Source of the DNA: Magallana gigas
Lineage: Eukaryota
DNA: 64,000 nucleotides
Direction: 5' to 3'
NCBI RefSeq assembly: GCF_963853765.1
Contig: NC_088859.1
Span: 51,832,001-51,896,000 of the forward strand
The notes below the pieces were generated by a model. The model had not been told where the DNA came from, did no database searches, and saw only the letters and a program-made list of their open reading frames with translations. The position numbers were made by a program, and so were the translations under genes. Within the stretch, counting starts at the first letter, position 1. Each line of letters starts with the position of its first letter. Below, piece by piece: positions 15,903 through 58,881 of this stretch.

Positions 15903-16099
15903 AACAAGACTAATGTCTTGATTAATAAAGCAAATCGGCGTCTGTCTGATTAACAAAACTATAATGCAATTTTCATATGGAGACTTCTTTATTTACATAA
16001 CATATAAACAATATCATGGCACTTACTTTGATAAAAACATAACACAAAGTAAATGTTTCTTTTTTTAGATCACATTGCACTTTACTTTGCCCAATCATT

Positions 16100-16940
16100 T
16101 AGTTATATACACCGTAACAAATAAACACAGACTCAGAATAATATACACCGTAACAATTAAACACAGACTTGGAGTAATATACACCGTAACAAATAAACAC
16201 AGACTCAGATTTACATACACCGTAACAAATAAACACAGACTTGGAGTAATATACACCGTAACAAATAAACACAGACTCGGAGTAATATACACCGTAACAA
16301 ATAAACACAGACTCAGAGTAATATACACCGTAACAATTAAACACAGACTTGGAGTAATATACACCGTAACAAATAAACACAGACTCAGATTAACATACAC
16401 TGTAACAAATAAACACAGACTCAGATTAACATACACCGTAACAAATAAACACAGACTCAAACTAACATACACCGTAACAAATAAACACAGACTCGGAGTA
16501 ATATACACCGTAACAAATAAACACAGACTCGGAGTAATATACACCGTAACAAATAAACACAGACTCAGAGTAATATACACCGTAACAATTAAACACAGAC
16601 TCAGAGTAATATACACCGTAACAAATAAACACAGACTCAGATTTACATACACCGTAACAAATAAACACAGACTTGGAGTAATATACACCGTAACAAATAA
16701 ACACAGACTCAGAGTAATATACACCGTAACAAATAAACACAGACTTGGAGTAATATACACCGTAACAAATAAACACAGACTCAGATTAACATACACTGTA
16801 ACAAATAAACACAGACTCAGATTAACATACACCGTAACAAATAAACACAGACTCAAACTAACATACACCGTAACAAATAAACACAGACTCGGAGTAATAT
16901 ACACCGTAACAAATAAACACAGACTCAGATTAAAACTACA
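16100..16940. repeat. 36-bp minisatellite, ~24 copies, downstream of the CTL stop codon
   Basis: Unit ATATACACCGTAACAAATAAACACAGACTCGGAGTA; period seen at 16141/16177. Confidence 0.96.
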
Positions 16941-17191
16941 CAAATATATCACAGAGTAGAGTCTGGTTGATTTCTGTTGTATACACTTCATAAGAAAATG
17001 GTAGATTGAGAATAAGAGAGTTATCCAAGACGCATCAGATTTTCATTCTTCTTTAAAGTTCTATTTCCATCTCCTCGGTTTCGACAGCAGTTGTCACAAA
17101 CCACTAACCGAACACTCAAATGCACAGCATGGTTGTTGGTGAAGCAACCACATAAGACGGTGGTTGTTCATCTAGAAAGTGACGTCATTAA

Positions 17192-20100: not shown

Positions 20101-23100
20101 GTCAGCGATACACCTATAATGTATAGTGTCACTGAACAACGATAGACACACCTACAAGATATTACCACATAATAACGATGGACAGAAACAAACCCACAAT
20201 AGCGCGAAACAAAATGATAATAGAATCATGATAAATAATACAATTACATATATGAATATTAAATATCATACAAAATATATCGTAATAGAACCACTAAATA
20301 GATAGCGACACGTCTACAACATAGCGTAAAAGAATCACTATAGACAGTTATACATCTACAAAATATCGTAATATAATCCCTAAAGATAGCGATTCACCTG
20401 CAATGAATCGTAACAACATATTGTAATAGAATCACGACTGGTACTGTCACACCTACAATCTATCGTAACAGAATCACGATAAACAGCGATATAACTACAA
20501 AATATCGTTATCAGAATCACGATAAACAGCTATATACACCTATACAAAATATCGTTATCAGAATCACGATAGACAGCGATATACACCTATACAAAATATC
20601 GTTAACAGAATCACGATAGACAGCGATATAACTACAAAATATCGTTAACAGAATCACGATAAACAGCGATATACACCTATACAAAATATCGTTAACAGAA
20701 TCACGATAGACAGCGATACACCTATACAAAATATCGCTAACAGAATCACGACAGACAGCGATTCACCTACAAAATATCGTTATCAGAATCACGATAGACA
20801 GCGATACAACTATACAAAATATCGTTAACAGAATCACGATAGACAGCGATAAAACTACAAAATATCGTTATCAGAATCACGATAAACAGCGATATACACC
20901 TATACAAAATATCGTTAACAGAATCACGATAAACAGCGATATACACCTATACAAAATTTCGTTAACAGAATCACGATAGACAGCGATACACCTATACAAA
21001 ATATCGTTAACAGAATCACGATAGACAGCGATACACCTATACAAAATATCGTTACATGGTTACTATAGTATATTAACAATGTTTCGATAAACCAAGCGAC
21101 ACTTTGCAAATAATCGCGACACTGCTGCGCAACCTGGTAAACAGTTATATATATACAGGAACACAGGTACAAAGGTAAACGGTTATACAGTTACCCAGAT
21201 ACATAATTGACAGGTTCACAGGTGAATTATTCACGTACAGGTATCTGTGTCACTCACCGAGTGCTGTAGCCGACAGGTAACAAATCTCCTGCCAGGTCTT
21301 CTGGAGGTCGGACACACATTTCTGTGAATGAAAGCATCATCTCGTGAAAATTTTCACATACATAGTATATATTTGTCCTTGTTCATTCTGGAAAACAGGT
21401 CGTAATAACGCAGGCGTGGGGGGGGGGGCTTGTACCTCCATATTCATTATTCTCTTATGAGAAGTGGACAGGTGTTGTATAGCAGTTTTTCCGCCATAGT
21501 AGCTTCTCCCCCCGGAAAACCTACTATATAGTAGCCTTTCCCCCTGGGGGGAAAAGCTACTATATAGTAGCTTTTCCCCCATAGTAGGGTTTCTCCCTCA
21601 CGTTTTTGGTTCAGATTTTATAAAAAATATTGATGGAAATCCAGCAAGGATTAAAATTAATGTTTTTACACTCCCAGGTTGCATACATGTACAACTGAAT
21701 TCATCTATAAAGGCTAAGTTTCGTTTTGCCAATTTATAAAATTATAGACTATGCTGAAAATTGAACACGTGTGTAATGGAATTACACATAAAACTAAATT
21801 TAGGTAATTAATTGAAAAAAATACTTGGTTTTACAAGTTATACACTTATATGCATAATTCTGTGTTCTGAATTTGTACTAAGCAAGAATGTTTAAAGAAT
21901 TTTTTGATAAATCTATCGGACTGTCTGTCTGTTTTTGAAAATTTCATCCAGGCTAAACCTCTGTTTTAAAGAGATTTTGTTTCCAATGTTTCAGAGCCCG
22001 GTTTTTAAAATCCTATTATAATGATTATAGTGCATATTCTTAAGGGTCCAATGTCTCATAAACTAGAGATGACCATATCACCATATTTTCATAGTGGCAG
22101 TGGTTTACCACTTGTAGATGACTCTGAAAATTTCAGCCCTCAGGGTAGGGGCCATTGATGTTTCAGGGCCCGATGTTTAAAACCCCGTTATAATGATTGA
22201 AAAGTGTTCTATAAGTGGGGATCCGAATCTCATATTCTAGAGATGACCACTTAACCATATTTTCACAGTGATAGTGTTATACCACTAGTAGATGACACTG
22301 AAAATTTTAGCCCCCATGCAGGGTAGGGGCCTTTGTTGTTTTCGAGCCCGATGTTTGAAATCCAATTATAAAGAAAATGTATTTTTTAGGGCCCCATATT
22401 TCAAAAACTAAAGATGACCACATGAACATATTTTTACGGTCATTTAAAAGTAAAAACATCATTTAAAAATACACAATCGCTCATATATTTCCTTATCAAA
22501 ATGATTGAAAATTACGATTCTGCTTTTCTTTTTTAAGAACTATATATAATATGATTTAAATTTGGCCCCCATAATTCGCAATTTTTTCAAGTGTTTCGGG
22601 TACAGTAAAATGTTATGTTATTTTTTAGAAGAGTTGATTTAAAATATATTTTTTACCTATTCATTTGGTTTATTTGCACTCACTTGCAGTATATGACGTC
22701 AGAAGTAACGCTATTACTACAATTCAATCAAAATCGGTCAAAAATTGACATTTTTCTTATCCGTTTACGAATGGGAAATATAGAGCGCATGCTTGAACAA
22801 AGATATTTTTTGTTACTTATTAGTCTTGGCTATAAATATCTCTGATTAAAACAAGCTGTTTTATGCTAAAATTGCAAAAATGGCGGGAAAAGGTTGTCTT
22901 TACGATGTCATATTTCTTAAATGTGAGCACTTGAATCAAAATGAACATTATGTATAAACATCACATATATATCTGTACAAAGAAAAAAAAAGAATTGAAG
23001 TAAAACGACGATGTTCATTTTAGGGGGCCATCTAAGGCGCCCATATCATATATAGTCCAAAGTTTACGAACAAATTTTTTTAAAAAGGTACGCAGGTAAA

Positions 23101-26100
23101 TTCATTATTCTTTAAAACATTTAATCAATTCATAAGATGACTAATGATATAATAAATAACTAGATAAATAAATCAATAAACTTTTATTCATAAAAGGGGC
23201 AACCGAAAATCAAAAATAAATAACCAACCTAAGCGCATACATGTATACGACTTTTGTAACTTGTTAGTTGATTAGAAGACCAAGCTTATATTTAAAAAAA
23301 AAATAAGTCAGCTCATCACAATAGATGTGGTGGTTTGTTGGGGGTTGGTTTTTTTTTTAATTACCCTTGTTTCATTGTTCGAAGAAATAATATGGTACAC
23401 AAGTAAATCTTTATTGCAATAATATGAAACAAATAGTAATATACGATTTTTAGGTAAGTGAATCGATTTATATGGCATCGTTTTCAAAATTGTATATTTA
23501 TAAATCACGTTGCAAACTTAAAAGTGGAAAATTAGCAAATACTGAGTGTAAATATATACATAAGGTTAGTTCAGGCTCCATTTCACATTTTCCAAAGTAA
23601 CCAGCAAAGATACCGACATTGTTCTGGTTGTGAAGACATTTTTTTTTTGAAACAAAATGTTTACATCATAAAATCTCACGTTTCGTAAAAAATGTGCTAA
23701 AAAATATGAATATGTGTAATTTTAAAACAAAATTGTAAACACTAACTTTCACATGCTTTTAATATATAATCAATTAAAATACCCCTTACCCATGATTTAG
23801 AACCCCATCAATCTAAATAAAACTAAAACATTTCAGTTCTCATCATATCATCGACCCTGTTTGATATTTAGAAGAAGAAATATAATTGTTTTTAAAATCG
23901 TCAATTCGAACGGTATTATTTAAAATTGATAGCCTTTTGGACGAAGGGAGTAATACATTTCCACTTTTTATTCCCTTCCTCTACAAAATTAAGTCAAGAT
24001 TGTACAGTTAGTTCCCTCGGAGAAGCTTATACAGAGATGGTAATACATTGGAAAATTAAAGTTCCAAACCAGCGTATTTTTACTCAAATGTGTTCTCACG
24101 TGTTCTTAACGTCAAAGTCGAAACTGTAGATAAGCATCGATTAGATGAAAAAGATTCGAGGTATTCCGAAATCCGTGTAAATGGTGTTTCAAAAAGGTGT
24201 AAAAACAAGTGAAATAAACGACGATGACACATGAATGTTATGGAGGCGCGTGCCTTAGTTCATATTTGGGGTTAAAAAACCATGAAATACTATTTTATTC
24301 TATGTATTGATAAATGCCATAATTATCCTTTTCTATGAGAAATTGATATCATATAAATTATTGCAAATTATATATTGCCACGAATGGTCCACCATATACA
24401 TGGCCGGAATGTAAAAGAAGGGGGAAAATCCACTATATAGTAGGTTTTCCGTGGGGGTAATCTGGCTATAAAAAGGGTAAAGCCCACTATATAGTCAGCT
24501 TTCCCTGGGGGAAAAACTGCTATATAGCCATTTTTCCGGGGGGAAGAACTGCTATATAGCCATTTTTCCGGGGGGAAAGATGGCTAGGGGGAAAAGGCAC
24601 TATATAACACAGGCATAGCCTACATCCACGGATGTAGGCTATGCCTGTCCACTTCTCAAAAGAGAATACATATTCATAAGTTGACTTTATCCTCATATTT
24701 TTACCAAAAAATAAGTTTTGAAAAGCAGTGCCCCCTCCCTTCTTTTCGAAGGTAACATATAATTTGTCAGTGAAATTTGATGAAAAATTTTCAAAATGTT
24801 TCAAACACCCCCTTCTATTGTATAAATCTTCGCTCATTCAACCAAAAAAATATAGGTTTGCATCTAAAGAAATGTTTCTGTCATATATTCTCCAAAAATA
24901 AAAAAAAAATGTTAGTTTCATTACCTCTGTGAAATTGGGGTCTATTTTGTTGAGGATGTCATTAATGGCCCCAGTCAGAATCTCAAAGGGTTGATTGAAA
25001 GACTTGGGTATACACCGGAACAGAAATGACTCTCTGTAATGGAAAGGTGCAGTATGAACTTAAACTTAGTCAAGCTTTATATTCATATATGAAAAATGTA
25101 TAAATCTGATAGGCTGTACAACGTCTTACTGGGCTTCTATCGGTAGGTTAGGACATTTGTCAAGGCCATTGGAATTCCCGTCAAAAAATGAGTCTCGCGG
25201 GATGTCATACCAACATAGGCTCGTCCCCGTGTCATTGAAGAATGTTTGTAGATCCGCCACATTTGTCTGGGATTTGGTGGGACAGCTCTTCACGCAAACA
25301 GCTACCGTATCAACGGAAACGTGAGAGCCAGGGATGTAGTTGACAAATATTGACTTGTCGTAGAAAAACAGATTTCTGTAAGCAAAAAGTCATTTAAAGT
25401 GTTGCAAATAAAGGATCCTGTAGAAAATTAACATTTAAAGTATATTTAAATTGATTCATTCAATAAATTACCGTATGCAAAATTCATATTCGGCTACTGG
25501 ATTGTTTACATGTTCAATGTGTAAGCAAAATCTCCGTCAACATCTGACATTAAACACTTTAATTAATATTTCCTACTTTAATTTTTCCCCTTCAGAATCA
25601 GCTAATATACAACACAATATACTCTGTGCTGTATTGTATATAATTATATACAGCATATATGTCTGGCCTCTAGCCCGTGTCTTACCGCCTGTCCGAGCAG
25701 TCCTCCCCCGACCTTGACACGCCCTCTATCCGCCCGTTTCGCTGACCACAAACGTTGCCCCAACTGTCCACGCCGTAGATAAGTCTATCCGGATCCCCCA
25801 GGTAAAAGGCCAGGTAAGTCCCGTACCCCGTCCCTCCCAGCATACACACAAACACCAGCAGGCACACAACATCACGGCACGACCTTTTCTGGAGGGGCCC
25901 ACAGAATTCCGGGGCCGCACCCCCGGAACCCTGAAAACAATACTTGTTGGGCATCAAGGAACAAAGTGATGAACAACAGATAGGATGAGACTGATACAGA
26001 TGGGGGATTTCTCTACACGTGAGACCTCACGTGTACGGGGAATTATTAATCTATCTAATGAGGTCGAAATCCGATTTGGACCTAAAACCATATAGTACCG

Positions 26101-26635: not shown

Positions 26636-27957
26636 CACAGATGTGGGGTCATCGGGGGCCGCTGTCTAGAGAATTAAACCCTGGAGCAGCGGGGCCGGGA
26701 ATCGGTGCATCTCCAATAAACCTGAAACAAAACATGAAACCTCGACAATTCAGTTTTGTCGGTCATTGTCGGGGACAGGGGGAGGACACGACCCTGGGTC
26801 AGACTCTGATTTATTTCAGTAAATTCTTCACCAAATTCAGAAGAAATTCCGGGAAACCCCTCTTGTCGTGTCCCCAGGTAAACAGCGTTAATTGTAGTAA
26901 TGAGTGTTATGTTCGAGGACCACAGCATGTCATTTTACCGTATTTTAATCACTTTTCTGACGTTCACGGTTTGTGTCAATTTAGACGGGATTCCGTTTAT
27001 CTATTTCTGTTTATGACAAGACATCAGCAGGAGAGGTCTTCCGGTCAGGTTTTAAGTTTACTTACCTTTATAATTAAGAATGAATCTCCTCGCCATGTCG
27101 CATTACGTCATAGAATTCGCATAGGTGAGCTTCAGTTGTCATGGCAGAATCGACCCGCAGGTTACTCTCGTTTATCGATTCCGCCGGACTGATGCCTGTC
27201 TTATTTGCATTGTAGATTCGGTCATATATCAACCATATCCTTTCTTTATATTAGTTTCACTCTGGTTCTTTGCTTTCTCTGTGTCTACTACTACAAATTG
27301 AAGGGTCGATGCACGTTATCATTTGTAATGTACCGATATTGATTTTAAAAATTTTTTTCGTTTGGTTATATACGCGATGAATATTATTTGCAACTCGTTA
27401 ATGTTATTGGTTCAGGTAAAATCCGAAAGTGACAAGTTGATGCTAAATGTAGCGGTTTTGATTTTATATTTATATATATAAGTATATGAGTATGTTCCAA
27501 AACCAGAGGGGTCACCGTAAACAACCCCTAACTCGGGGGAGTCGACAAAAAGTAGGGGGGAGTCGATTCCAACGCATGGGGGAGTCAATTTTCGCCGCTT
27601 CGGAGACGGGAGGAATTTAGGTCACGCCTTTTGTAGGTATTTATAAGAAGTATTTCCAAAAAAGATATTCCGCACGGAAGACAGCGATAGTCAAACTTTG
27701 TGTCGGTCATTGGTCCGAGTTCTCTATGCGTCTAGTAGTCTCAAACACTTCGAAAATATTTGACAAAGAACTATATATGATAAGAGTTAAATTTGGCCCC
27801 CATATTTCGCCATTTTTTAAGTGTTTCGGGTACAATAAAATGTTAACTAATTTTTTAGAAGAGTTGATATAGAATATATTTTTCATCTTTTTATTTGATT
27901 TATTTGCACTCACTGTCAGTATATGACGTCAGAAGTGACGCCATTTCTATAATTCAT

Positions 27958-28117
27958 TAAGAAATGAAGATAATAATTTTTCTATTGATCGACGTATCAA
28001 AGAAAAAATTGACCGGAAAACTTCATCAATGCGCGTAGCGCATTGATGAAAAAGTTTTCCGGTCAATTTTTTCTTTGATACGTCGATCAATAGAAAAATT
28101 ATTATCTTCATTTCTTA
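27958..28117. repeat. 160-bp near-perfect palindrome
   Basis: ~78-bp arms around a 3-nt loop: ..CATCAATGCGC GTA GCGCATTGATG..; the only difference is a 3-A indel. Confidence 0.93.
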
Positions 28118-28719
28118 TCATTTAATATAACATTTTCAAATCAAAAAATGTGAAGTGTCATTGATCAAAAATGTAAATAATGTAAATAAAGCGGCGCGTA
28201 TGAATACAAAACAACAACAGCAACAATATTCAAAATGGATGCGTCTTCAGCTGATGCAGAGCTATTGTACTGAATTTAATGGATTAAACACAAATAGTGA
28301 GTTAAAATCAGAACCGACTGAATTGAAAACGAAAGGAAAATACATGCGATAGCTTGTGATATTATTCACTGTGCAGAAAAATTCGTAATAAAACTAGTTT
28401 TCATGTGAGATCGGTGGAATATGCAACTGGACATAACCATCCAAGGAGAGGCGATCGTGGACGAAAATAGTTGTTATGTCGACAAAGAATAGTATGTATA
28501 AGCGACTTTTGTAAACGTTGTGGTAACTAGATAGCCAGTGATGTACTTAAATGGTATACTAGTATCTGCCGCTTGGAATGCGCCGAAGGAGTTGATGCAT
28601 TGTACTCATAACGATGCTTATTTTGAATTTCTGATGACCGATCATGTAGGGTACTGTGTAAATATAAAAATCATCGTTACCAAATTTGAACAGCAGTGTT
28701 ACCGTGAAAGTGTATGGGC

Positions 28720-29109
28720 CTATATGTTCGTTATAATTATTCCGGAAAAGGAACAGCCAGCCTCGCAGTAATGTTGATTGATCTCAACGACAAGCAGACG
28801 AAATCGTTAGAAGACGCTTAATTTTCTATTTCGTGAATTAGATATTGTGTTTTGTTTATTTTTGAAGGTTAGACTTTCAAGTTTTTATGTTTATAAAGAT
28901 GTATTTTGTTTGCTGACAATAAAACAGACACAACATTACACTTTGTTGACAGTGTTTTTTTTGAAAATTCCCGTTCTATAAATAGTGTTTGATCAGAACA
29001 GTTGAGAAAAGTAGATCCGGCAAAAAAAATTATTGATGCAGGTATCAAAGAAATTTTTCGACCAATCAGAAGCGCCGATATCTCATCAAACGAATAAATA
29101 TTAAATGAT
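28720..29109 (-). repeat. Interspersed repeat (family Y), inverted homologue of 50620-51000
   Basis: Its reverse complement matches 50620-51000 (for example GCGCTTCTGATTGGTCGAAAAA, ACACTGTCAACAAA, CGATTTCGTCTGCTT). Confidence 0.8.
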
Positions 29110-30630
29110 ATCAAAATCAGCCAAAAATTAACATTTTTCTTATCTATTTACGAATGGGAAATATAGAGCGCATGCTAGAACAAGGAAAAATTTTTTGTCA
29201 CTTATAGGCCTTGGCTAGATACACCTCTGATTAAAATATTTTATTTGTTCAAGAATGCGCTCTATGTTTTCGGAAGGAAAAACTTCTTGAAAACAAGCTG
29301 TTTTACGCAAAAAATGCAAAAATGGCGGGAAAAGGTTGTCTTTACAATGTCATATTTCTAAATTGTGGGCACTTGAACCAAAATGAATATTATGTAAACA
29401 CATCACATACATATCTGTACTAAAAAAACAAAGAATGATAGTAAAATGATGTTGTTCATTTTAGGGGGCCATTTTAGGCACTTATCGTATAGTCCTTTCA
29501 AATTCACGGTTATCGGGTGGTCAAAATATGCATGATTTGTAAAATATACGACTTGCTTTGGGTTACAGACAGTTGAAACAGTCGAACAAATGATCAACCT
29601 TGTAAGTGCAATGATCAAATCCTAACAAATCTTAGGAAAAAATGAATGATCAAGACATTTTCTGTTCAGATGTAACGGTGACGAAGGGGGGAGTCGATTT
29701 TCAGAAAACCGAACGCACGGGGGAGTAGAAAATAGTGTAAATTTAACTTTACACTGAACTTGTATCATCTTTCAAACCTTATTTGATATCAGTTGTCAAT
29801 ATATAAAGTATATTAAACACTGTTTACAAACGGTTTCATAACCAGTAGCTAAAAATGCAAAATATGTGTTCAAATAAAACGATATATCTTCATAACTTTA
29901 CTTTTTCTCTTTTCTTGTGATTTGTGTATCTCAAACCATATCAAAGACACATGGGGTTCACAACAACATTCACAGAACTACATTTATCTGTTGTGTTTTG
30001 TCATTATCCTGTGTGTGTGTTGTTAGTTTGTTTGTTTTTTTAAATTCGTTGTTTTCGTACATATAAACACACTAGTAATACAGAGGATATGATTTAAAAT
30101 GCTGTATTTGTTTTTGTCATCTGTATATCATGTATGTATTTGCTACCGAAGGGTGGTTTGTGGGTGCTCTTGTCAGTATGATTATCTAGTAAGGCCGCGG
30201 CGACGTTGACTTGTTAAATTGGGGGGGGGGGGGGGGGGGGCAAAAAGTAGTTGTATTCCTGTGGACTGTATGTGAACAGAATGCCTGCTTTTCTCTTTTG
30301 TGCTGATTGAAGCATAGTTAAATCATAAATTTTATATTTGGCTGATGAATTATATAATTATCAATATATGTACTCCTATTGTACGATAAATAGTATAGTC
30401 ATCAATTGTGTTTATTCAAACAATAAAGTGCTTTCTTTGGTTATGCATACCGGTATATGATGGTAGCTAACATTCAAGAAAAGTACATAATCCGAGTTAT
30501 CAGTTTACGTATGTATATATATCCTGATATTTTTGCTACTATCATAGCCCTAAGAATCACTGAAGAAAGCATGTTTACTGTTTATTTTGTAATAGTGTAT
30601 ATATAATAGGCTCATTACTGTCACGCTCCT

Positions 30631-30700
30631 ACTAGCACTAGCTAGTTGGACCGTTGGTTATTAAACTGAATAGTCGCAGGTTCGAGCCTAGATCTGGTCA
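30631..30700 (+). pseudogene. Degenerate tRNA-derived sequence (SINE head or tRNA pseudogene) inside the Transib-like element
   Basis: A-box-like TAGCTAGTTGG (30639-30649) and B-box GGTTCGAGCC (30679-30688) at tRNA-like spacing. The stems do not pair properly, so this is not a functional tRNA. Confidence 0.4.
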
Positions 30701-32293
30701 TTCCTCCATTTTCTATCACTATATATTTTCATCCACCAAGTATACTTTCCTCTATTTCTTACGGAAATTGATTGTATAGTATAATTCATAGCTCTGAAGA
30801 AACTGACAGGACTGAAGTCTATACGCCTCGTTTATCAACAGCTCGAAATCTTCATCAAGCTAGGAAAAATCACCGACTGCACGAAATGATCATGATGATG
30901 TCAGACTCAGTTTCTAATTAAATACGATTTGGCTGCTGCTCTTAAATAACGTACTGATGTACATCGACTATCATTTAGTTAGTTTTACTTTTTACAATCA
31001 GTTTATTGATGTTTTAAAAGAAAGATGTACATTTAAACAATGAAATGCTTTCTTTGTTGATTAATGTAGTTAACGAATGTAGCAATTATTGCAGAAAAAA
31101 TACGCATTTTTTTCTGCAATGTCGCCATCTTCATATCCCGCATGAATCACTAAAAAAAAGCATTTTATTTTTTTATTTATTGTCAAAACGTTACACTGAA
31201 CTAACATCCATATTCCGGATCCATATATGAAGAAGTTACCATGAGAACTATAGCTACTTGGAAGTTTGAACTTAGCCCTTGTACAGTCCGTGCTTTCGAT
31301 AAGTAGCTTTACTAGAATCGCTCAATCAAGAAGGGAAAAAAACGCACGCAATTCCAACGTTAACATTAAAAGTACAAAAAGACATCAACGACCGATGTAA
31401 AATATTTATCAATATAGCTCTTCAAATATTTTTTAAAAATTTGATCAGCTAAACTATGGATTAAAAAGTAGTTCTTGAAAGTCAATTAAACGTTTATGAA
31501 TACGTTCACACACATGTGGTTCGTTTCAATAATTCGCGCAACTATATGTTTTTTAAAGAAATAGAAAGAAAATACCTTTTAATAAATGTATTCTTTTTTT
31601 AATTCAATTTAAAAATAAAATAAAAACAAAATATGAAATTAAATGGAAAACATGAGTAGTACATGTACCTGTCTTTATTGCTTAAATAATTGTGAATAAG
31701 TTGAACCAATTTATTTATTAGATAAAGTCGACTTTTATAGACCTCGTAATTCTTTATGAAAATATAAGTTGAACATTCCCGATAGAGTGAATTGAATTGA
31801 ATTTTTCTACTCCCCCATGCGTTCTGTTTTCCGAAAATCGACTCCCCCCTACGTCACCGTTACATCTGAACAGAAAATGTTTTATCATTCATTTTTTCCT
31901 AAGATTTGTTAGGATTTGATCATTGCACTTACAAGGTTGATCATTTGTTCGACTGTTTCAACTGTCTGTAACCCAAAGCAAATCGTATATTTTACAAATC
32001 ATGCATATTTTGACCACCCGATAACCGTGAATTTGAAATTTGTCAAATATTTTCGAAGTGTTTGAGACTACTAGACGCATAGAGAACTCGGACCAATGAC
32101 CGACACAAAGTTTGACTATCGCTGTCTTCCGTGCGGTATATCTTTTTTGGAAATACTTCTTATAAATACCTACAAAAGGCGTGACCTAAATTCCTCCCGT
32201 CTCCGAAGCGAAGAAAATCGACTCCCCCATGCGTTGGAATCGACTCCCCCCTACTTTTTGTCGACTCCCCCGCGTTAGGGGTTGTTTACGGTG

Positions 32294-32404
32294 GGGGTGT
32301 TCAGCAGAGCGGGTGCTCGCGAGCGCTCTCCAAAATTTGTGTTGCAGGTGTAGGGAAATTAATTGGCGAGCGCTGGCGAGCACCCGCTCTGTTGAACACG
32401 CCTG
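32294..32404. mobile_element. ~115-bp mini-MITE whose left TIR was the insertion target of the Transib-like element
   Basis: GTGTTCAGCAGAGCGGGTGCTCGC ... GCGAGCACCCGCTCTGTTGAACACGCCTG. Removing 27513-32293 and one TSD restores a CAGAGGGGTGTTCA left end. Confidence 0.72.
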
Positions 32405-33262
32405 TGGTATCCCTAGCTGTCACCACCCCCAAACATGTCACCTGACGATGTGTACAGTGTGAAAATTCCAATCACTGCTTTGTGTCACTATTTAAGCAAA
32501 AACCTGTAAGTTCTAGAACATATCATATCATATTTGCGATGCATTAAACGCTTCGAAATAAATTCGCTTTTAGGGCGAGGTCTCTCCTCATTTTATGTTT
32601 TTAATGCTGTATAACTTTAATCATTTTTTCCAGAAAAAATAATACCAACCCTTGGACGATTCGGCAAGAGAACCGCTGACTTCTCGGCTCTAACCGACAA
32701 CTTATAGCCTTACATCTCTAAATAAATAGAATGTTTTAGAAAAAAATATATGCTTCTGTTGTGAAAAATAGTATTTTGTGGCATTTTTTGATCGAAAAAA
32801 ACTCCATTCATTTTTTAGAAGAATTTAAGAACGTGTCACTGGGTTTATATTACCAAACTAGTATATAGGTTACTAAAATAATTTAGCAACTTTGCAATTT
32901 ACTTTGAGAAAAAGTAAGAGTGTACTTGTGTGCATCCTCACGATTTCGGGGTCCTGTGTCCACTTCGGCTGTGGGATGTTCCATGGCCATGCACAATAGG
33001 ACTCAGGTCAGTCAGGACCCCCGATGTAGCCAGGATATTCACGAGATTACGGTGTAATCGATCTAAATTACTTTTTCACTAATTTCGTAATTACCATACA
33101 AGGGGCTTTTCTTTTTTAAATATCTTTTTACTTAAACAGAACAGGAAATAACTGTAGGAGGAAACAAAGAAATTGAAAAAAAAAAAACACCATGAATTAT
33201 GCTACATCAATCATGTGAAATAAGCAAGGTCTGGAAAGTGGAAACCGCCTCGCACCGTTATC

Positions 33263-50166: not shown

Positions 50167-50619
50167 TTATCAGCATTTTTTAACGGAAAGATGTTTGGTT
50201 GACAATTCTTTAATTGTGTTGTGTTTAATGTGTTGTCTTATTTTGTTATATCATTTTGTCTGTTAATTAATCATTGTAAAAATATAATTTATACTATATA
50301 AATCATACCTTAATTTAAACTATACATAATCTATAGCTCTATCCTATAGGAGTGTATACCTGACCCAGACATCATTATCTAGGACAATACTATTGAGAAT
50401 GAATGTTATCAAAATCAAATACAGGTCTATTAAAGTGTACATGCACGACCTAACTGGAGTAACTACGTGTATAGGCTGTGACCTACATCGATAAGACGTT
50501 GGTTCGACACCCGTATTCAACATTTATCAAATAATTTAAATATTAAGAAAACAACTAAAATCAAGGTACAAAAACTGTACCCGTCCAATATTTGTACAAA
50601 GTTACGGATTTTTTAGATC

Positions 50620-51000
50620 ATTAAATATTTGTTATTTTATAAGATATTGGCGCTTCTGATTGGTCGAAAAATTTTTTGGATACCTGCATCAATAAAAAAT
50701 TTTCTGGATCTACTTTTCTCAACTGTTCTGGTTTAACACTAATCATAGAACGGTAATTTCCAAAATAAACACTGTCAACAAAATGTAATGTTGTGTCTGT
50801 TTATTGGTCAGCAAACAAAAGACATCTTTATAAAAATATAAAAGTAAAAGTTCAACCTTCAAAAATAAAACAATACACCTTTATTTATTTCACTAAATGA
50901 AAAACTAAACGTCTTCTCACGATTTCGTCTGCTTGAGATCAACGACCAACATTTACGGCGAGGCTGGCTGTTCCAATTCCAGGAATAATTATAACGAGTA
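50620..51000 (+). repeat. Interspersed repeat (family Y), homologous to 28720-29109
   Basis: Colinear inverted match to 28720-29109. Confidence 0.78.
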
Positions 51001-52444
51001 GGTATATATATATACTTACACGGTAACACTAACGATACTAAGGTTGGTCAGTTGGTCCATTTTAGAACCTATGATATGATGTCCCAAAAGTAGCTTTCAA
51101 TTATCTTTCTTTTCTATATTGTTTTAAGTATTGTCTGACATAGAATACAGTAAAAATTTTGTAAGTTTTACAGTAAAAGAGTTTCATATCTAAAAATGTC
51201 GAAAGAGATACAAAAACAGTTGTTTCGGCGAGCAATGTGGGCCCTGGGCCTCTCATTAGTAATGAGCAAATTCACTGCTGCCCTGCCCTAAAGGTAAGGG
51301 TTAAACCATGTAGTCATCGTAACACCAGCATTAACATGGACTGTGCCACATCGCGATAACAATGGTTATCATGGGCTGTTTCACATAACCATTGCAATGT
51401 CAATGGTAAATGTTTGATTGTTAAAAGTGAAATAAATAACTTCCTATAAGGTCTAAGAAGACCTGATACTCATGCAGGGCCTTTTTTTGATACAATGAAA
51501 AATGAATATTAAAACTATCACATTTTATTCAGAAACAAAACAATATTTCAGGTTTAATTCAATGTCTTCTACAAGTGTTGCATAAAGTTTTACAGGTATT
51601 TTGCATTAACATTTTTCCACAAAATTCTTTTGATACAATTATTTCATGCAATCGCCCACATGTGAACTATGATTCTTTATAAACAATTTTTTTTTACTAG
51701 AATCTGATTAAAAAAATGAAATATGATTTCATATCATGTGTCAGCAATTTTATCATTAATTTGTAACTTAAAGGCATTGAATATGATTCAAACATAAATA
51801 TTTGTGAAGTGTTATAAAACACAAGAGCCACACAATAAACATGTAGACTTTACCAATATCAAACATTATTTTAATATAAATGGTGTTGTAAATCTGCTTC
51901 ACACAATGACATTGAGTGCAAAATAGAAAAGTAAATACAAAGTAAGAGTACAATACTGGTTGTAAGATGGAAACAGATATGTATATGCTGTTATACATGA
52001 TTTCATGGATTTTCATTAATGCCCTGCAGTGAAAAATAGATTTCCCTTCATAAAATAAAAAAAAAACAGGTGCTCCAGTAAATACCGGTAAATACACATA
52101 ACTTATTTGACATCAGGATGTATCAGCTATGCTAGGCAGTGTTGGATCTTTCTCTGGAATTCAGTGTGAACTGAACAGCATTGTTATAATGCAAGGGAAG
52201 GATATTGTGTACAGGCTGTTCCAAGACCCACCACAGAAAGTTGTTAAAGTACTCCCAGAGGATTGTCTCAGATCTGATAAGATGTGTGTTTCTGACAGTG
52301 TCTAGTCTATGCCCTTCACAGTGTAGACACATCGCTATGGTCCTATACGTGTCACTGTGTTATCCTCCACTGCAAGGCGATCAGTTTTTAACAGACACAC
52401 AAACATGACAATATGAGCAGTGAGTTATCTCCCTTTCTCTATGA

Positions 52445-55400: not shown

Positions 55401-58400
55401 CATAAATTTAAACGATCACTTGCACCCTCGCATCGTGGTTTATGATATAAGCATACAAGAACACACATATACCAGTACACAGATCATGGTATATGAGTAA
55501 GTTCACATGACCAAACGCACCATTAAATTATGGTGTAAGCACAGGCGCCCAACGTTAAAATTTTTTTCTTATTAATAAAATTATCCCCAGTGCAATAATT
55601 ATATTAATTATACATGTAGGAATTATTATTATAGTACAGGGGATAATTCTATTATTAAGAGAAAAATCTTTAATGTTGGGCACCTGTGGGTGAATGATAT
55701 TGAACAAGTTGAGTACACATACCCTCGGATCATGGCAAAGGAATCGTCGCTGGAGAAGAAAGAGCTTCCCGGGATGTTGGTAACGGTTTGTTTCCCAGCA
55801 TTGATCAAATCGGGGTCCACCTCGTTGGGCAGTGGGTAGGGGCCCTGTCAACAGAATATAGCTGTAATGGTATAGTTTCTCAAACAGACATTTATTCAAT
55901 TCTAAATACTGTGAAACCATTTGAATTTGTGGGGGCTAATTTCCATGGATTGCCAGTGTCTTGTAGGTTTGTGGTCACATATATTTCATGGATTCACTTT
56001 TAAGAAATAAAAATAAAACATAATTTGTTGACGATTGAAATTTCTGTGGTACTCATAAAATTAATGATAATTGAGCCACAATGAATTTTTATGGTTTTAC
56101 AGCATATCTGAACTTCTGTTGAGCATCTTGAAAATCTTATAGGCCATGCTTTTAAATATTCTTACTACCATTTCATTAATGTAACACTACTGAATTTACA
56201 ATGTTAAGTGTTATAGAATTGGATTTTATCTATGAGAGAAATGAAGAACCTACCAGTCCCATGATTCCGTTCTCACTCTGTAAATGGACGGTCATTCCCG
56301 GAGGTATGTAGTTACTGGCTAACATCGGCATCCCAATACCAAGATTGGCTGAAATTTAATGTAATACATGTATACACCTGTAGCTATAATATCTATAAAC
56401 TGTAGATGTGAAATAAACCTGTAAAATGTCAATGAATTGTAACTTTTGTAAGACTACAATCAGACAATCCCTGAGGATACCACAGATTGACAAAATACCA
56501 TAGATTCCATCGTGGAACTCCAGCGCGGCCCGTTTGATGATTCTGTTCCTCATTTCGGCGGCGGCATCGTTCGCCTCAGGGTCACTCTGACCTTCAGTTC
56601 TTGTTGTCATCCTCTGTAAGGGAGATCACTCAATGAGAAATTAGTCTCATCGCTGTGTGTGCATAACTATTTTCCCCAATAATTATGAGTTTTTTGGGGT
56701 TTAAACATAACAAAGAAAATAAGCACACCGCATAAAAGAACTTGTATACTGAACCCTATGACCCCTATACTGGCCTACATTACCTATCTCATACATCAGC
56801 CCACGTGACCTACCTCAATCCTCTTCTCGTAGCTGGGCCCCTTGATGACCCTCTGGACGTAGACGTGAGGTACATGGATGTCCTCCGGGGGGATTTCCCC
56901 AACCTCCACAATCTCCTCCACCTCAGCGATCGTGATGCGGCCCGCCTTACACATGGGAGGGTTGAAGTTACGGGCAGTCTTCCTGCAAACATTGTTCTAA
57001 AGATTATTCAACTGTCTTTGGCTTCATTTCATCATTTATGTAATATATCTCATTTAAAAGAGATGTATTATGAATTGAGTAATTCATCCGACTTCCGATG
57101 ATATTTTAAATCCAGAAGATAGGGTATTGAGTCTGTTCATTTACTTTAGCATCTTTCAGAACTTAAAAGTACAGGTGATGATTTACCTGAAGGCAAGACT
57201 GATCACTTTCCTCAGTAAATTGTTATTTTACAAGAATGTAAATATAGTTGAACTTTGATATCTCGATCACTGATATCTCAAATACCTGGTAAAAATTGGA
57301 TATGTCAGTGATTTGTACATCCCAACCACTTATTTTTAAGTATTCCACCCTCAATATCTTGAATACTTGGATATCTCGAAGTTTTTAATAAGTCCCATAT
57401 AGTTTGAGATAACAAAGTTCGACTGTAATTTACTTGAAGGGGAGAGTAATGATCAAACTGAAGGAAATCTTGATAATTTTTATGAAAGTGAGGTTGCTTC
57501 TTTATGTAAAGGAAGATTATAATAAAACAGAAAGGAATAGAGTTAATTTATCTGAAGGAGAAGTTAACAATTGAGATGAAGGAGAGGTTAACAGTTAAGA
57601 AGAAGGATTATTAAGAGGGTTTAACAGTTATGATGATGGAGAGTTTAAAAGTTATGATGAATGAGAGTTTAACAGTTAGGATAAGGGAGAAGTTAACAGT
57701 TAGGATGAAGGAGAGTATAACAGTTAGGATGAAGAAGAGGTTATCAGTTAGGATGAAGGAGGGTTTAACAGTTAGGATGAAGGAGAGTATAACAGTTAGG
57801 ATGAAGGAGGGTTTAACAGTTAGGATGAAGGAGAGTTTAACAGTTAGGATAAGGGAGAAGTTAACAGTAAGGATGAAGGAGGGTTTAACAGTTAGGATAA
57901 AGGAGAGTTTAACAGTTAGGATGAAGGAGAGTATAACAGTTAGGATAAGGGAGAAGTTAACAGTTAGGATGGAGGAGAGTATAACAGTTAGGATGAAGAA
58001 GAGGTTATCAGTTAGGATGAAGGAGGGTTTAACAGTTAGGATGAAGGAGAGTATAACAGTTAGGATGAAGGAGGGTTTAACAGTTAGGATAAGGGAGAAG
58101 TTAACAGTTAGGATGAAGGAGAGTATAACAGTTAGGATGAAGGAGGGTTTAACAGTTAGGATAAGGGAGAAGTTAACAGTTAGGATGAAGGAGAGTATAA
58201 CAGTTAGGATAAAGAAGAGGTTATCAGTTAGGATGAAGGAGGGTTTAACAGTTAGGATGAAGGAGAGTATAACAGTTAGGATGAAGGAGGGTTTAACAGT
58301 TAGGATAAGGGAGAAGTTAACAGTTAGGATGAAGGAGAGTATAACAGTTAGGATGAAGAAGAGGTTATCAGTTAGGATGAAGGAGGGTTTAACAGTTAGG

Positions 58401-58881
58401 ATGAAGGAGAGTATAACAGTTAGGATAAGGGAGAAGTTAACAGTTAGGATGAAGGAGAGTATAACAGTTAGGATGAAGGAGAGTTTAACAGTTAGGATGA
58501 AGGAGGGTTTAACAGTTAGGATAAGGGAGAAGTTAACAGTTAGGATGAAGGAGAGTATAACAGTTAGGATGAAGAAGAGGTTATCAGTTAGGATGAAGGA
58601 GGGTTTAACAGTTAGGATGAAGGAGAGTATAACAGTTAGGATGAAGGAGGGTTTAACAGTTAGGATAAGGGAGAAGTTAACAGTTAGGATGAAGGAGAGT
58701 ATTACAGTTAGGATAAGTGAGAGGTTAACAGTTATGATGAAGAAGAGTTTAACAGTTAGGAGGTGATGTTATACCTGAAGATGAGGTTGCCCAGTTTGTC
58801 TGCCTTGTAAGCTTTGACCAGGGCAAAGTCACCAGTGATTGCCTCCTCCATGATGTACTTAAATCCATTGAATTCTCTGAC
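52445..58881 (-). CDS. OXCT1: Succinyl-CoA:3-ketoacid CoA transferase (SCOT), 3' nine coding exons; 5' exons not found in the window
   Basis: Exons: complement join 58775-58881, 56814-56982, 56499-56613, 56254-56348, 55723-55844, 55208-55283, 54811-54900, 54647-54727, 54145-54246 and terminal 52445-52480. Motifs: [45 protein letters not shown] (catalytic Glu), [12 protein letters not shown]-like [42 protein letters not shown]. Counting the terminal exon there are ten segments. Confidence 0.95.
52845..54050. repeat. 45-bp minisatellite, ~26 copies with +12-bp and -9-bp variants, in the last OXCT1 intron
   Basis: Unit CTAGTCCAGGGCTCCAGGCCAACAGTCACACATACAGAAATAACA. Confidence 0.96.
57560..58765. 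repeat. 24-bp purine-rich minisatellite, ~50 copies, abutting the OXCT1 donor at 58774
   Basis: Unit AACAGTTAGGATGAAGGAGAGTTT with recurring variants; it produces the spurious 378-aa ORF. Confidence 0.95.

What the first reader, a model, noticed from the sequence alone, without database searches (positions are those of the whole stretch)
27513..32293. Non-autonomous element with Transib/RAG-like ends (CAC termini, 5-bp GC-rich TSD) and unusually long TIRs
Seen: exact GGGGT duplication, CACCGTA..TACGGTG ends, and ~480-bp near-identical TIRs with repeated GGGGGAGTCGA motifs (candidate transposase binding sites). The boundary is confirmed independently because excision restores a mini-MITE TIR. 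Established: CAC ends with 5-bp TSDs characterise Transib and ProtoRAG/RAG-like transposons, relatives of the V(D)J recombinase, whereas Chapaev/CACTA make 2-4-bp TSDs. Inference: high TIR identity implies recent activity and an autonomous partner elsewhere in the genome. It lies between the divergent CTL and ZNG1 promoters.
Basis: partly seen in the sequence, partly recalled or inferred. Interest (0 to 1): 0.7.

Follow-up and report, generated by a model that had tools for sequence, protein, structure and literature searches.

The report
Oyster jumping-gene relic with 5-bp footprint
This is a real but protein-less DNA transposon, present in some oyster haplotypes and absent from others, whose end sequence and 5-bp target duplication fit the RAG/Transib group of jumping genes, although the enzyme that moves it could not be identified.

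Summary
Window 27513-32293 starts CACCGTAAAC, ends GTTTACGGTG and is flanked by an exact GGGGT duplication.

- **Arms:** the right arm is 491 bp (31803-32293). The left arm is the same sequence (97.4%) but is split by a 1,728-bp nested high-copy element (27768-29495).
- **Motifs and coding:** each arm carries five GGGGGAGTCGA-type repeats. No ORF exceeds 81 aa.
- **Filled and empty sites:** 18 public oyster contigs carry the filled left junction and stop 27-29 nt inside the element. Six contigs of a 7-11% divergent haplotype show the uninterrupted host MITE, i.e. an empty site.
- **Second copy:** an old 467-bp copy (L082) has the same ~21-bp ends and an exact 5-bp duplication, ATTAC. The long arms and the GC-rich target are therefore not family-wide.
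- **Copy number:** read depth suggests roughly 25-40 copies.
- **Superfamily:** CA..TG ends place it with the CMCT transposons, and the 5-bp duplication points to Transib/RAG-like. No transposase partner could be found. The ends resemble published oyster RAG-like ends only in CAC, and subterminal repeats are more typical of CACTA or hAT.
- **"Recent activity":** not supported for this copy.

First readers flagged four other CAC/5-bp elements elsewhere in this genome. None was followed up.

The parts
27508..27512 (.). left copy of the 5-bp target site duplication, GGGGT
27513..27767 (+). outer 255 bp of the left arm. It begins CACCGTAAAC and holds direct repeats 1-3 at 27535, 27556 and 27578.
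   Evidence: The left junction is seen in 18 public contigs.
27768..29495 (.). nested very-high-copy element that splits the left arm. It has no target duplication and is not part of the family.
   Evidence: The empty site GACAAA|TTTCAAA is preserved in the right arm. Depth is about 400-500 times single copy. Other copies lie at 22535-23055 and 50610-51030.
29496..29732 (+). inner 237 bp of the left arm, with direct repeats 4-5 at 29687 and 29719
29733..31802 (.). non-coding internal region. It includes a run of 21 G at 30221-30241 and a high-copy segment at about 30686-31267.
   Evidence: No ORF over 61 aa. Depth is 3-14 times single copy outside the high-copy segment. No tRNA or Rfam family reaches threshold.
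31803..32293 (-). uninterrupted 491-bp right arm ending GTTTACGGTG, with five direct repeats at 31806, 31838, 32218, 32240 and 32261
32294..32298 (.). right copy of the target site duplication, GGGGT
32299..32408 (.). host mini-MITE into whose left inverted repeat the element inserted. The MITE's first 11 bp are at 27502-27512.
   Evidence: (I5). The MITE end is uninterrupted in L085, L087-L089, L091 and L092.

Best explanation
This is a non-autonomous cut-and-paste DNA transposon of a moderately repeated oyster family.

**Conserved ends and target cut (shown).** The family's conserved ends are about 21-22 bp, CACCGTAAACAACCCCTAACGC. Insertion makes a 5-bp staggered cut, which leaves a 5-bp duplication.

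**Mobilising enzyme (inferred).** The element is moved in trans by a DDE transposase encoded elsewhere. That enzyme most likely belongs to the CA..TG-ended CMCT clade and, because of the 5-bp duplication, is of the Transib/RAG-like type.

**Subterminal repeats (inferred).** The 11-bp repeats (GGGGGAGTCGA, spaced 21-22 bp next to the end) are the likely transposase or accessory-protein binding sites.

**Long arms (inferred).** The 491-bp arms of this copy are a derived inverted duplication of the left end, not a requirement. An older relative keeps one arm and only a ~21-bp right end.

**History of this copy (shown).** It inserted into a small MITE between the CTL and ZNG1 genes on one haplotype lineage. 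It was later hit by another element and is now an old resident. One allele has even lost the left end.
For: - Anatomy.
- Insertion status: excising the element restores the host MITE, and six contigs of a divergent haplotype show an empty site.
- Boundary: 18 contigs from different samples carry GGGGT|CACCGTAAAC and all end 27-29 nt inside the element. This is what 31-mer assembly gives when the sequence becomes multi-copy at the CAC.
- Multi-copy family: in raw reads the arms are 25-60 times single-copy depth and the internal region is 3-14 times.
- Second copy: L082:701-1167 is 82% identical and flanked by an exact ATTAC/ATTAC.
- Deletion derivative: one contig joins the left arm to the last 37 bp of the right arm (table 5c).
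- No coding capacity.
- Literature: the CMCT clade has CA..TG ends and 2-5-bp TSDs (PMC12730594). Transib, RAG and RAG-like elements make 5-bp TSDs and have CAC ends (PMC1131882, PMC7204232, PMC10629977).
Against: - No transposase was linked to the family.
- The ends match the oyster RAG-like TIR (CACTATCAAACC) only in CAC. They match the Transib heptamer CACAATG at 4 of 7 positions.
- Arrays of subterminal repeats are a hallmark of CACTA and hAT elements. They are not described for Transib or RAG-like elements.
- Classical Transib transposases are almost absent from molluscs: one element in the survey of PMC10294476. Only a damaged RAG1-like core is reported for the Pacific oyster (PMC4411706).
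- The second copy's target is AT-rich.
- In that old copy the third base of both ends is not C (CAA and CAT). This is presumably decay.
- Only two TSDs were seen.
Confidence: 0.5

Rival explanations
1. The family belongs to another or an undescribed CMCT lineage (CACTA/EnSpm-, Chapaev- or Lanisha-like) that happens to make 5-bp duplications. Multiple subterminal repeats would be bound by a TnpA-like accessory function.
For: - It has CA..TG ends and subterminal direct repeats in both arms.
- TSD length in the CMCT clade ranges from 2 to 5 bp (PMC12730594).
- Earlier follow-ups in this genome report RAG1-fold, Chapaev-like transposases with atypical (zero) TSDs (s1-382346, s1-395841). These were not checked here.
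Against: The named CMC lineages make 2-4-bp TSDs, whereas both copies here have exactly 5 bp. The terminus is CACCG, not CACTA.
Confidence: 0.25
2. It is a hAT-type MITE of the hAT5 group. That group also makes 5-bp duplications and typically has short TIRs plus subterminal repeats.
For: - The TSD is 5 bp in two copies.
- The conserved TIR is short (~21 bp) and comes with subterminal repeats.
- CANCG resembles the hAT end motif YARNG, and the old copy's left end, CAACG, fits it.
- A hAT5 group is cited in PMC12730594 (its reference 31).
Against: The third base is C at both ends of the window copy and at the left end in 18 population contigs. hAT ends have G at that position (PMC1131882, legend of Fig. 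S7) or a purine generally (my own knowledge).
Confidence: 0.12
3. It is not a mobile unit. A local inverted duplication or rearrangement mimics TIRs, and the 5-bp repeat is chance.
For: Only one full-length copy was seen directly.
Against: - An empty site exists in other haplotypes.
- The repeat boundary falls exactly at the CAC in 18 samples.
- Depth of the arms and of the internal part is multi-copy.
- An independent copy elsewhere has its own 5-bp TSD.
Confidence: 0.02

Closest known systems
Transib and RAG-like (ProtoRAG, mollusc RAGL-B) transposons
   Same: 5'-CAC...GTG-3' ends and a 5-bp target duplication. One of the two targets is GC-rich. An A-run at TIR positions 35-39 overlaps the place of the Transib nonamer.
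   Different: - No RAG1-core transposase is linked to the family.
- The heptamer is CACCGTA rather than CACAATG or CACTATC.
- It matches 8 of 17 positions of the protostome consensus CACTWMCAAACKTYKBB.
- It has five subterminal direct repeats per arm and, in this copy, 491-bp arms. Neither is described for those families.
CACTA/EnSpm and Chapaev (CMC) elements
   Same: CAC-type ends and arrays of short subterminal repeats near both ends.
   Different: Those families make 2-4-bp duplications and this one makes 5 bp. The terminus is not CACTA.
hAT5 group of hAT transposons
   Same: 5-bp duplication, short conserved TIR, subterminal repeats and MITE-like derivatives.
   Different: The third terminal base is C, not a purine. 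No hAT transposase is linked to the family.
IR/DR-type Tc1 elements (e.g. Sleeping Beauty); comparison from my own knowledge
   Same: Long inverted arms carry binding-site-like direct repeats at their outer and inner ends.
   Different: Those elements duplicate TA and belong to an unrelated superfamily. Here the long arms are not family-wide.
KolobokP composite-like elements of bivalves (PMC9587614)
   Same: Terminal repeats of about 450 bp in an oyster, and some TSDs of 4-5 bp.
   Different: KolobokP repeats are direct, have their own short TIRs and end RR..YY. Here the repeats are inverted and the ends are CA..TG.

Membership tests
Transib / RAG-like transposons | 5-bp target site duplication | tested here: met
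   GGGGT/GGGGT at the window copy. ATTAC/ATTAC at L082. Only two copies were seen.
Transib / RAG-like transposons | Termini 5'-CAC ... GTG-3' | tested here: met
   Both ends of the window copy and the left end in 18 population contigs. The old copy has CAA and CAT, taken as decay.
Transib / RAG-like transposons | RSS-like TIR: heptamer plus A-rich second block (Transib CACAATG-N23-AAAAAAATC; protostome RAGL CACTWMCAAACKTYKBB) | tested here: inconclusive
   By eye against the consensus sequences quoted in PMC1131882 and PMC7204232. It matches 4 of 7 positions of the Transib heptamer. AA is present at positions 35-36, about a 0.1 chance. It matches 8 of 17 positions of the RAGL consensus, several of them degenerate.
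Transib / RAG-like transposons | Preference for GC-rich targets | tested here: inconclusive
   GGGGT in a 57-60% GC site within a 38% GC window. The second copy sits in ATTAC.
Transib / RAG-like transposons | Autonomous partner encoding a RAG1-core/Transib DDE transposase | not testable with these tools
   There is no transposase in the element or the window. The oyster genome could not be searched by DNA. Collection scans found nothing relevant.
CACTA/EnSpm, Mirage, Chapaev (CMC) | 2-4-bp TSD | tested here: not met
   5 bp in both copies. 4- and 6-bp models fit the host MITE worse.
CACTA/EnSpm, Mirage, Chapaev (CMC) | CA..TG ends with subterminal repeats | tested here: met
hAT (hAT5 group) | Terminal motif YARNG, with a purine at the third base | tested here: not met
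   CACCG at both ends and in 18 contigs.
hAT (hAT5 group) | 5-bp TSD | tested here: met
Non-autonomous DNA transposon (MITE-like family) | TIRs, TSD, no coding capacity, multiple copies, and both empty and filled sites | tested here: met

The most novel reading that the evidence does not exclude
The family is the natural substrate of a still-active RAG-like or Transib-like transposase in oysters. That enzyme would recognise a CAC end plus an array of subterminal 11-bp direct repeats, an IR/DR-like mode of end recognition not described for this superfamily. It would have produced tens of MITE-like copies in a protostome.
Probability: 0.25. Interest if true: 0.55.

Novelty: new member of a known kind. 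Interest (0 to 1): 0.32.

Why it matters
If the partner proves to be RAG-like or Transib-like, these copies would be a ready set of natural substrates. They come with filled and empty alleles, for studying how an invertebrate relative of the V(D)J recombinase recognises its ends. They would also show that such enzymes have been active enough in molluscs to build a MITE family. Otherwise it is one more oyster DNA transposon. Its practical value is as a 4.8-kb presence/absence marker between two divergently transcribed genes, CTL and ZNG1.

Tried and rejected
- **Public DNA collections.** Exact-pattern scans for the repeat pair or the terminus gave 50 chance hits in metagenome contigs, none similar to the element. 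Prokaryote genomes and viral contigs gave nothing.
- **ORF inside the arm.** Homology search with a 60-aa arm ORF found nothing.
- **Flank ORFs.** Exact look-ups of several flank ORFs found nothing. One contig was too short to reach the element, and the ankyrin-gene contigs also stop short.
- **Transposase in the window.** None was found.
- **Each arm as a small element with its own ends.** Rejected. The inner 'CACCGT' is only a 6-mer, with 3 mismatches over 10 nt.
- **tRNA-derived SINE inside the element.** There is a B-box-like string, but ARAGORN and Rfam give nothing above threshold.
- **Other CAC/5-bp elements in the window.** None.
- **Heterozygosity from contig depth.** Not convincing.
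- **Earlier findings by sequence.** Blank.
- I did not type published RAG1-like protein sequences as queries, so oyster RAG-like loci were not fetched to compare their ends.
Full report
**What is in the window**

The stretch 27513-32293 begins CACCGTAAAC and ends GTTTACGGTG. It is flanked on both sides by GGGGT, at 27508-27512 and 32294-32298. The 20-nt terminus occurs only at these two places in the 64-kb window, against 0 expected. A scan for CAC...GTG inverted ends with exact flanking repeats of 3 to 8 bp finds only this pair, apart from a trivial palindrome inside the arms.

The right arm is one piece of 491 bp (31803-32293). The left arm is 27513-27767 plus 29496-29732, with 1,728 bp of foreign DNA in between. 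After splicing, the arms align over 492 and 491 nt with 12 mismatches and one indel, which is 97.4% identity.

The motif GGGGGAGTCGA (up to 1 mismatch) has 10 hits in the window, against 0.33 expected, and all lie in the arms. There are five per arm, all in the same orientation within an arm. They start at arm positions 23, 44 and 66, so the spacing is 21-22 bp. Two more start at 446/447 and 478/479.

Nothing inside the element codes for a protein. The longest ORF is 81 aa and lies in the nested element, and Pfam finds nothing.

**It is an insertion and its boundaries are exact**

The element sits in the left inverted repeat of a 121-bp MITE. Removing it together with one GGGGT extends that MITE's inverted repeat by 6 bp, of which 5 pair. 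The alignment score is 70, against 65 for a 4-bp duplication model and 63 for a 6-bp model.

I fetched public oyster contigs through an ORF in the left flank.

- **Filled site.** Eighteen contigs from different samples read ...CCAGAGGGGT|CACCGTAAAC.... Every one stops 27-29 nt inside the element. This is what 31-mer assembly gives if the sequence becomes multi-copy right at the CAC. That step is an inference from how such contigs are built.
- **Empty site.** Six contigs (L085, L087, L088, L089, L091, L092) come from six samples and belong to a haplotype 7-11% different from the window. They run straight from the left flank into the MITE...AACCAGA-GGCGCTT-GTTCAGCAG.... So the site is empty there.
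- **Target sequence.** The MITE's other arm has GGCGT at the matching place. The simplest history is therefore an ancestral GGCGT. It became GGGGT on the reference lineage before the insertion, and gained two bases on the other lineage. This history is inferred.
- **Both alleles in the same series.** Filled and empty contigs come from the same accession series (SRR6063..., ERR13913...). I could not tell whether these are two haplotype lineages of one species or two closely related species.

**The family**

- **Copy number.** In raw reads, single-copy depth is about 2.5. The arms reach 66-154 and the internal region 8-34, outside a high-copy stretch at 30686-31267. That suggests some 25-40 copies of the ends and fewer of this internal part. 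It is a rough estimate, because the number of reads laid was capped.
- **Near-identical sister copies.** Short internal contigs have 1-2 differences per 144 nt. In run X15 they sit at 334-474 depth, against 88-156 for the flanks. So a few near-identical sister copies exist.
- **Deletion derivative.** One contig joins the left arm at 29553 to the last 37 bp of the right arm (table 5c).
- **Second copy.** A homology search with an open frame inside the arm found one called protein, P0044. Its contigs, from two samples, hold an independent old copy at L082:701-1167. It is 82% identical to the arm. Its ends are CAACGTATACAACCCCTAACGC and, reverse-complemented, CATCGTATAAACCCCTAACGC. It is flanked by an exact ATTAC/ATTAC.

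It consists of one arm plus only a ~21-bp right end, so the 491-bp arms are a derived feature of the window copy's subfamily. Its target is AT-rich, so GC-rich targeting is not established.

**Age of this copy**

Several things argue against that for this copy.

- The left arm has been hit by another element.
- The arms differ by 2.6%. At five of the differing positions the reads show that one arm carries a private change (table 3).
- The filled junction is present in all 18 informative reference-like contigs. Their flanks differ from the window by 1.4-3%.
- The filled junction is also present in runs under two organism labels and in an oyster metagenome (table 8).
- One sample has an allele that joins about 27435 to 29871, removing the left end (L080).

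The family as a whole may have moved more recently, given the near-identical sister copies.

**Which superfamily**

CA..TG ends place the family with the CMCT clade: EnSpm/CACTA, Mirage, Chapaev, Transib and relatives. That clade makes 2-5-bp duplications (PMC12730594). Within it, 5 bp is the mark of Transib, RAG and RAG-like elements, together with an invariant CAC (PMC1131882, PMC7204232, PMC10629977). That is the positive case.

Several points weigh against it, or leave it open.

- No transposase could be tied to the family.
- The end is unlike the eastern-oyster RAG-like end CACTATCAAACC (PMC7204232, supplement). It fits the protostome consensus at 8 of 17 positions, several of them degenerate.
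- The Transib heptamer is matched at 4 of 7 positions. An A-run at positions 35-39 falls where the Transib nonamer lies, but that is only about a 1-in-10 coincidence.
- Arrays of subterminal repeats are typical of CACTA and hAT elements. They are not described for Transib or RAG-like elements.
- A survey found a single Transib transposase across molluscs (PMC10294476).
- Only a damaged RAG1-like core is reported for the Pacific oyster (PMC4411706).
- A hAT5 group also makes 5-bp duplications (cited in PMC12730594). However, hAT ends have G where this family has C (PMC1131882, legend of Fig. S7).

I put Transib/RAG-like at about one half, another or an undescribed CMCT lineage at one quarter, and hAT5 at about one eighth.

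**How it most likely works**

A transposase made elsewhere binds the terminal ~22 bp and the 11-bp direct repeats. It pairs the two ends, cuts at the CAC and integrates with a 5-bp stagger.

- **Shown:** the ends, the 5-bp stagger in two copies, the empty and filled alleles, and the lack of coding capacity.
- **Inferred:** that the repeats are binding sites, that the long arms arose by inverted duplication of the left end, and the type of enzyme.

**Earlier notes of this scan**

First readers flagged four other CAC/5-bp elements in this genome (s1-359049, s1-361718, s1-375871, s1-399459). None was followed up, and I cannot tell whether they belong to the same family. Follow-ups report RAG1-fold, Chapaev-like transposases here that insert without a duplication (s1-382346, s1-395841). 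I did not test any of these notes.

**Limits**

The oyster genome itself could not be searched by DNA. Only two TSDs and one end of the population contigs were seen.

Noticed in passing
window 27768-29495; also 22535-23055 and 50610-51030: This is a very-high-copy element, about 400-500 times single-copy depth, with short inverted ends (GAACTATA...TATAGTCC) and a 71-bp-arm internal hairpin at 27958-28117. It inserted into the left arm without any target duplication, and the right arm keeps the exact empty site GACAAA|TTTCAAA. Most genomic copies are a short form lacking 27957-29109 (779 reads show the joint). Flanks of other copies are AT-rich. It may relate to the no-duplication transposons reported elsewhere in this genome, or to Helitron-like carriers. 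This was not resolved.
   Followed up: partly
L080 (sample SRR6063216); L081 breaks at the same point: A structural allele at this locus joins window ~27435-27441 directly to 29871. It deletes the last ~70 bp of the left flank, the whole left arm, the nested element and 140 bp of the internal region.
   Followed up: partly
L092, L087 versus window 21448-24668 and 32337 onward: The divergent, empty-site haplotype also lacks window 21448-24668 (3.2 kb, including one copy of the nested-type element). Its sequence to the right of the MITE's left arm does not match the window. The whole intergenic region therefore differs structurally between haplotypes.
   Followed up: no
window 27533: The window has T here. 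All 18 population contigs and the right arm have G, so the T is a private or rare variant of the assembled individual.
   Followed up: yes
window 16075-16991: A tandem array of 36-bp units, each containing CACCGTAACA, is open in both strands (ORFs of 294 and 298 aa). It lies inside the CTL gene region.
   Followed up: no
window 30221-30241 and 30686-31267: There is a run of 21 G inside the element. There is also a 0.6-kb segment at 100-180 times single-copy depth, preceded by a B-box-like string (GGTTCGAGCC at ~30680). No tRNA or Rfam hit was found.
   Followed up: partly
window 57630-58763 (+): A 378-aa ORF built of short repeats hits beta-helix and fibre-type Pfam families (Gp5_trimer_C, Adeno_shaft). 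It is probably a repetitive low-complexity ORF.
   Followed up: no
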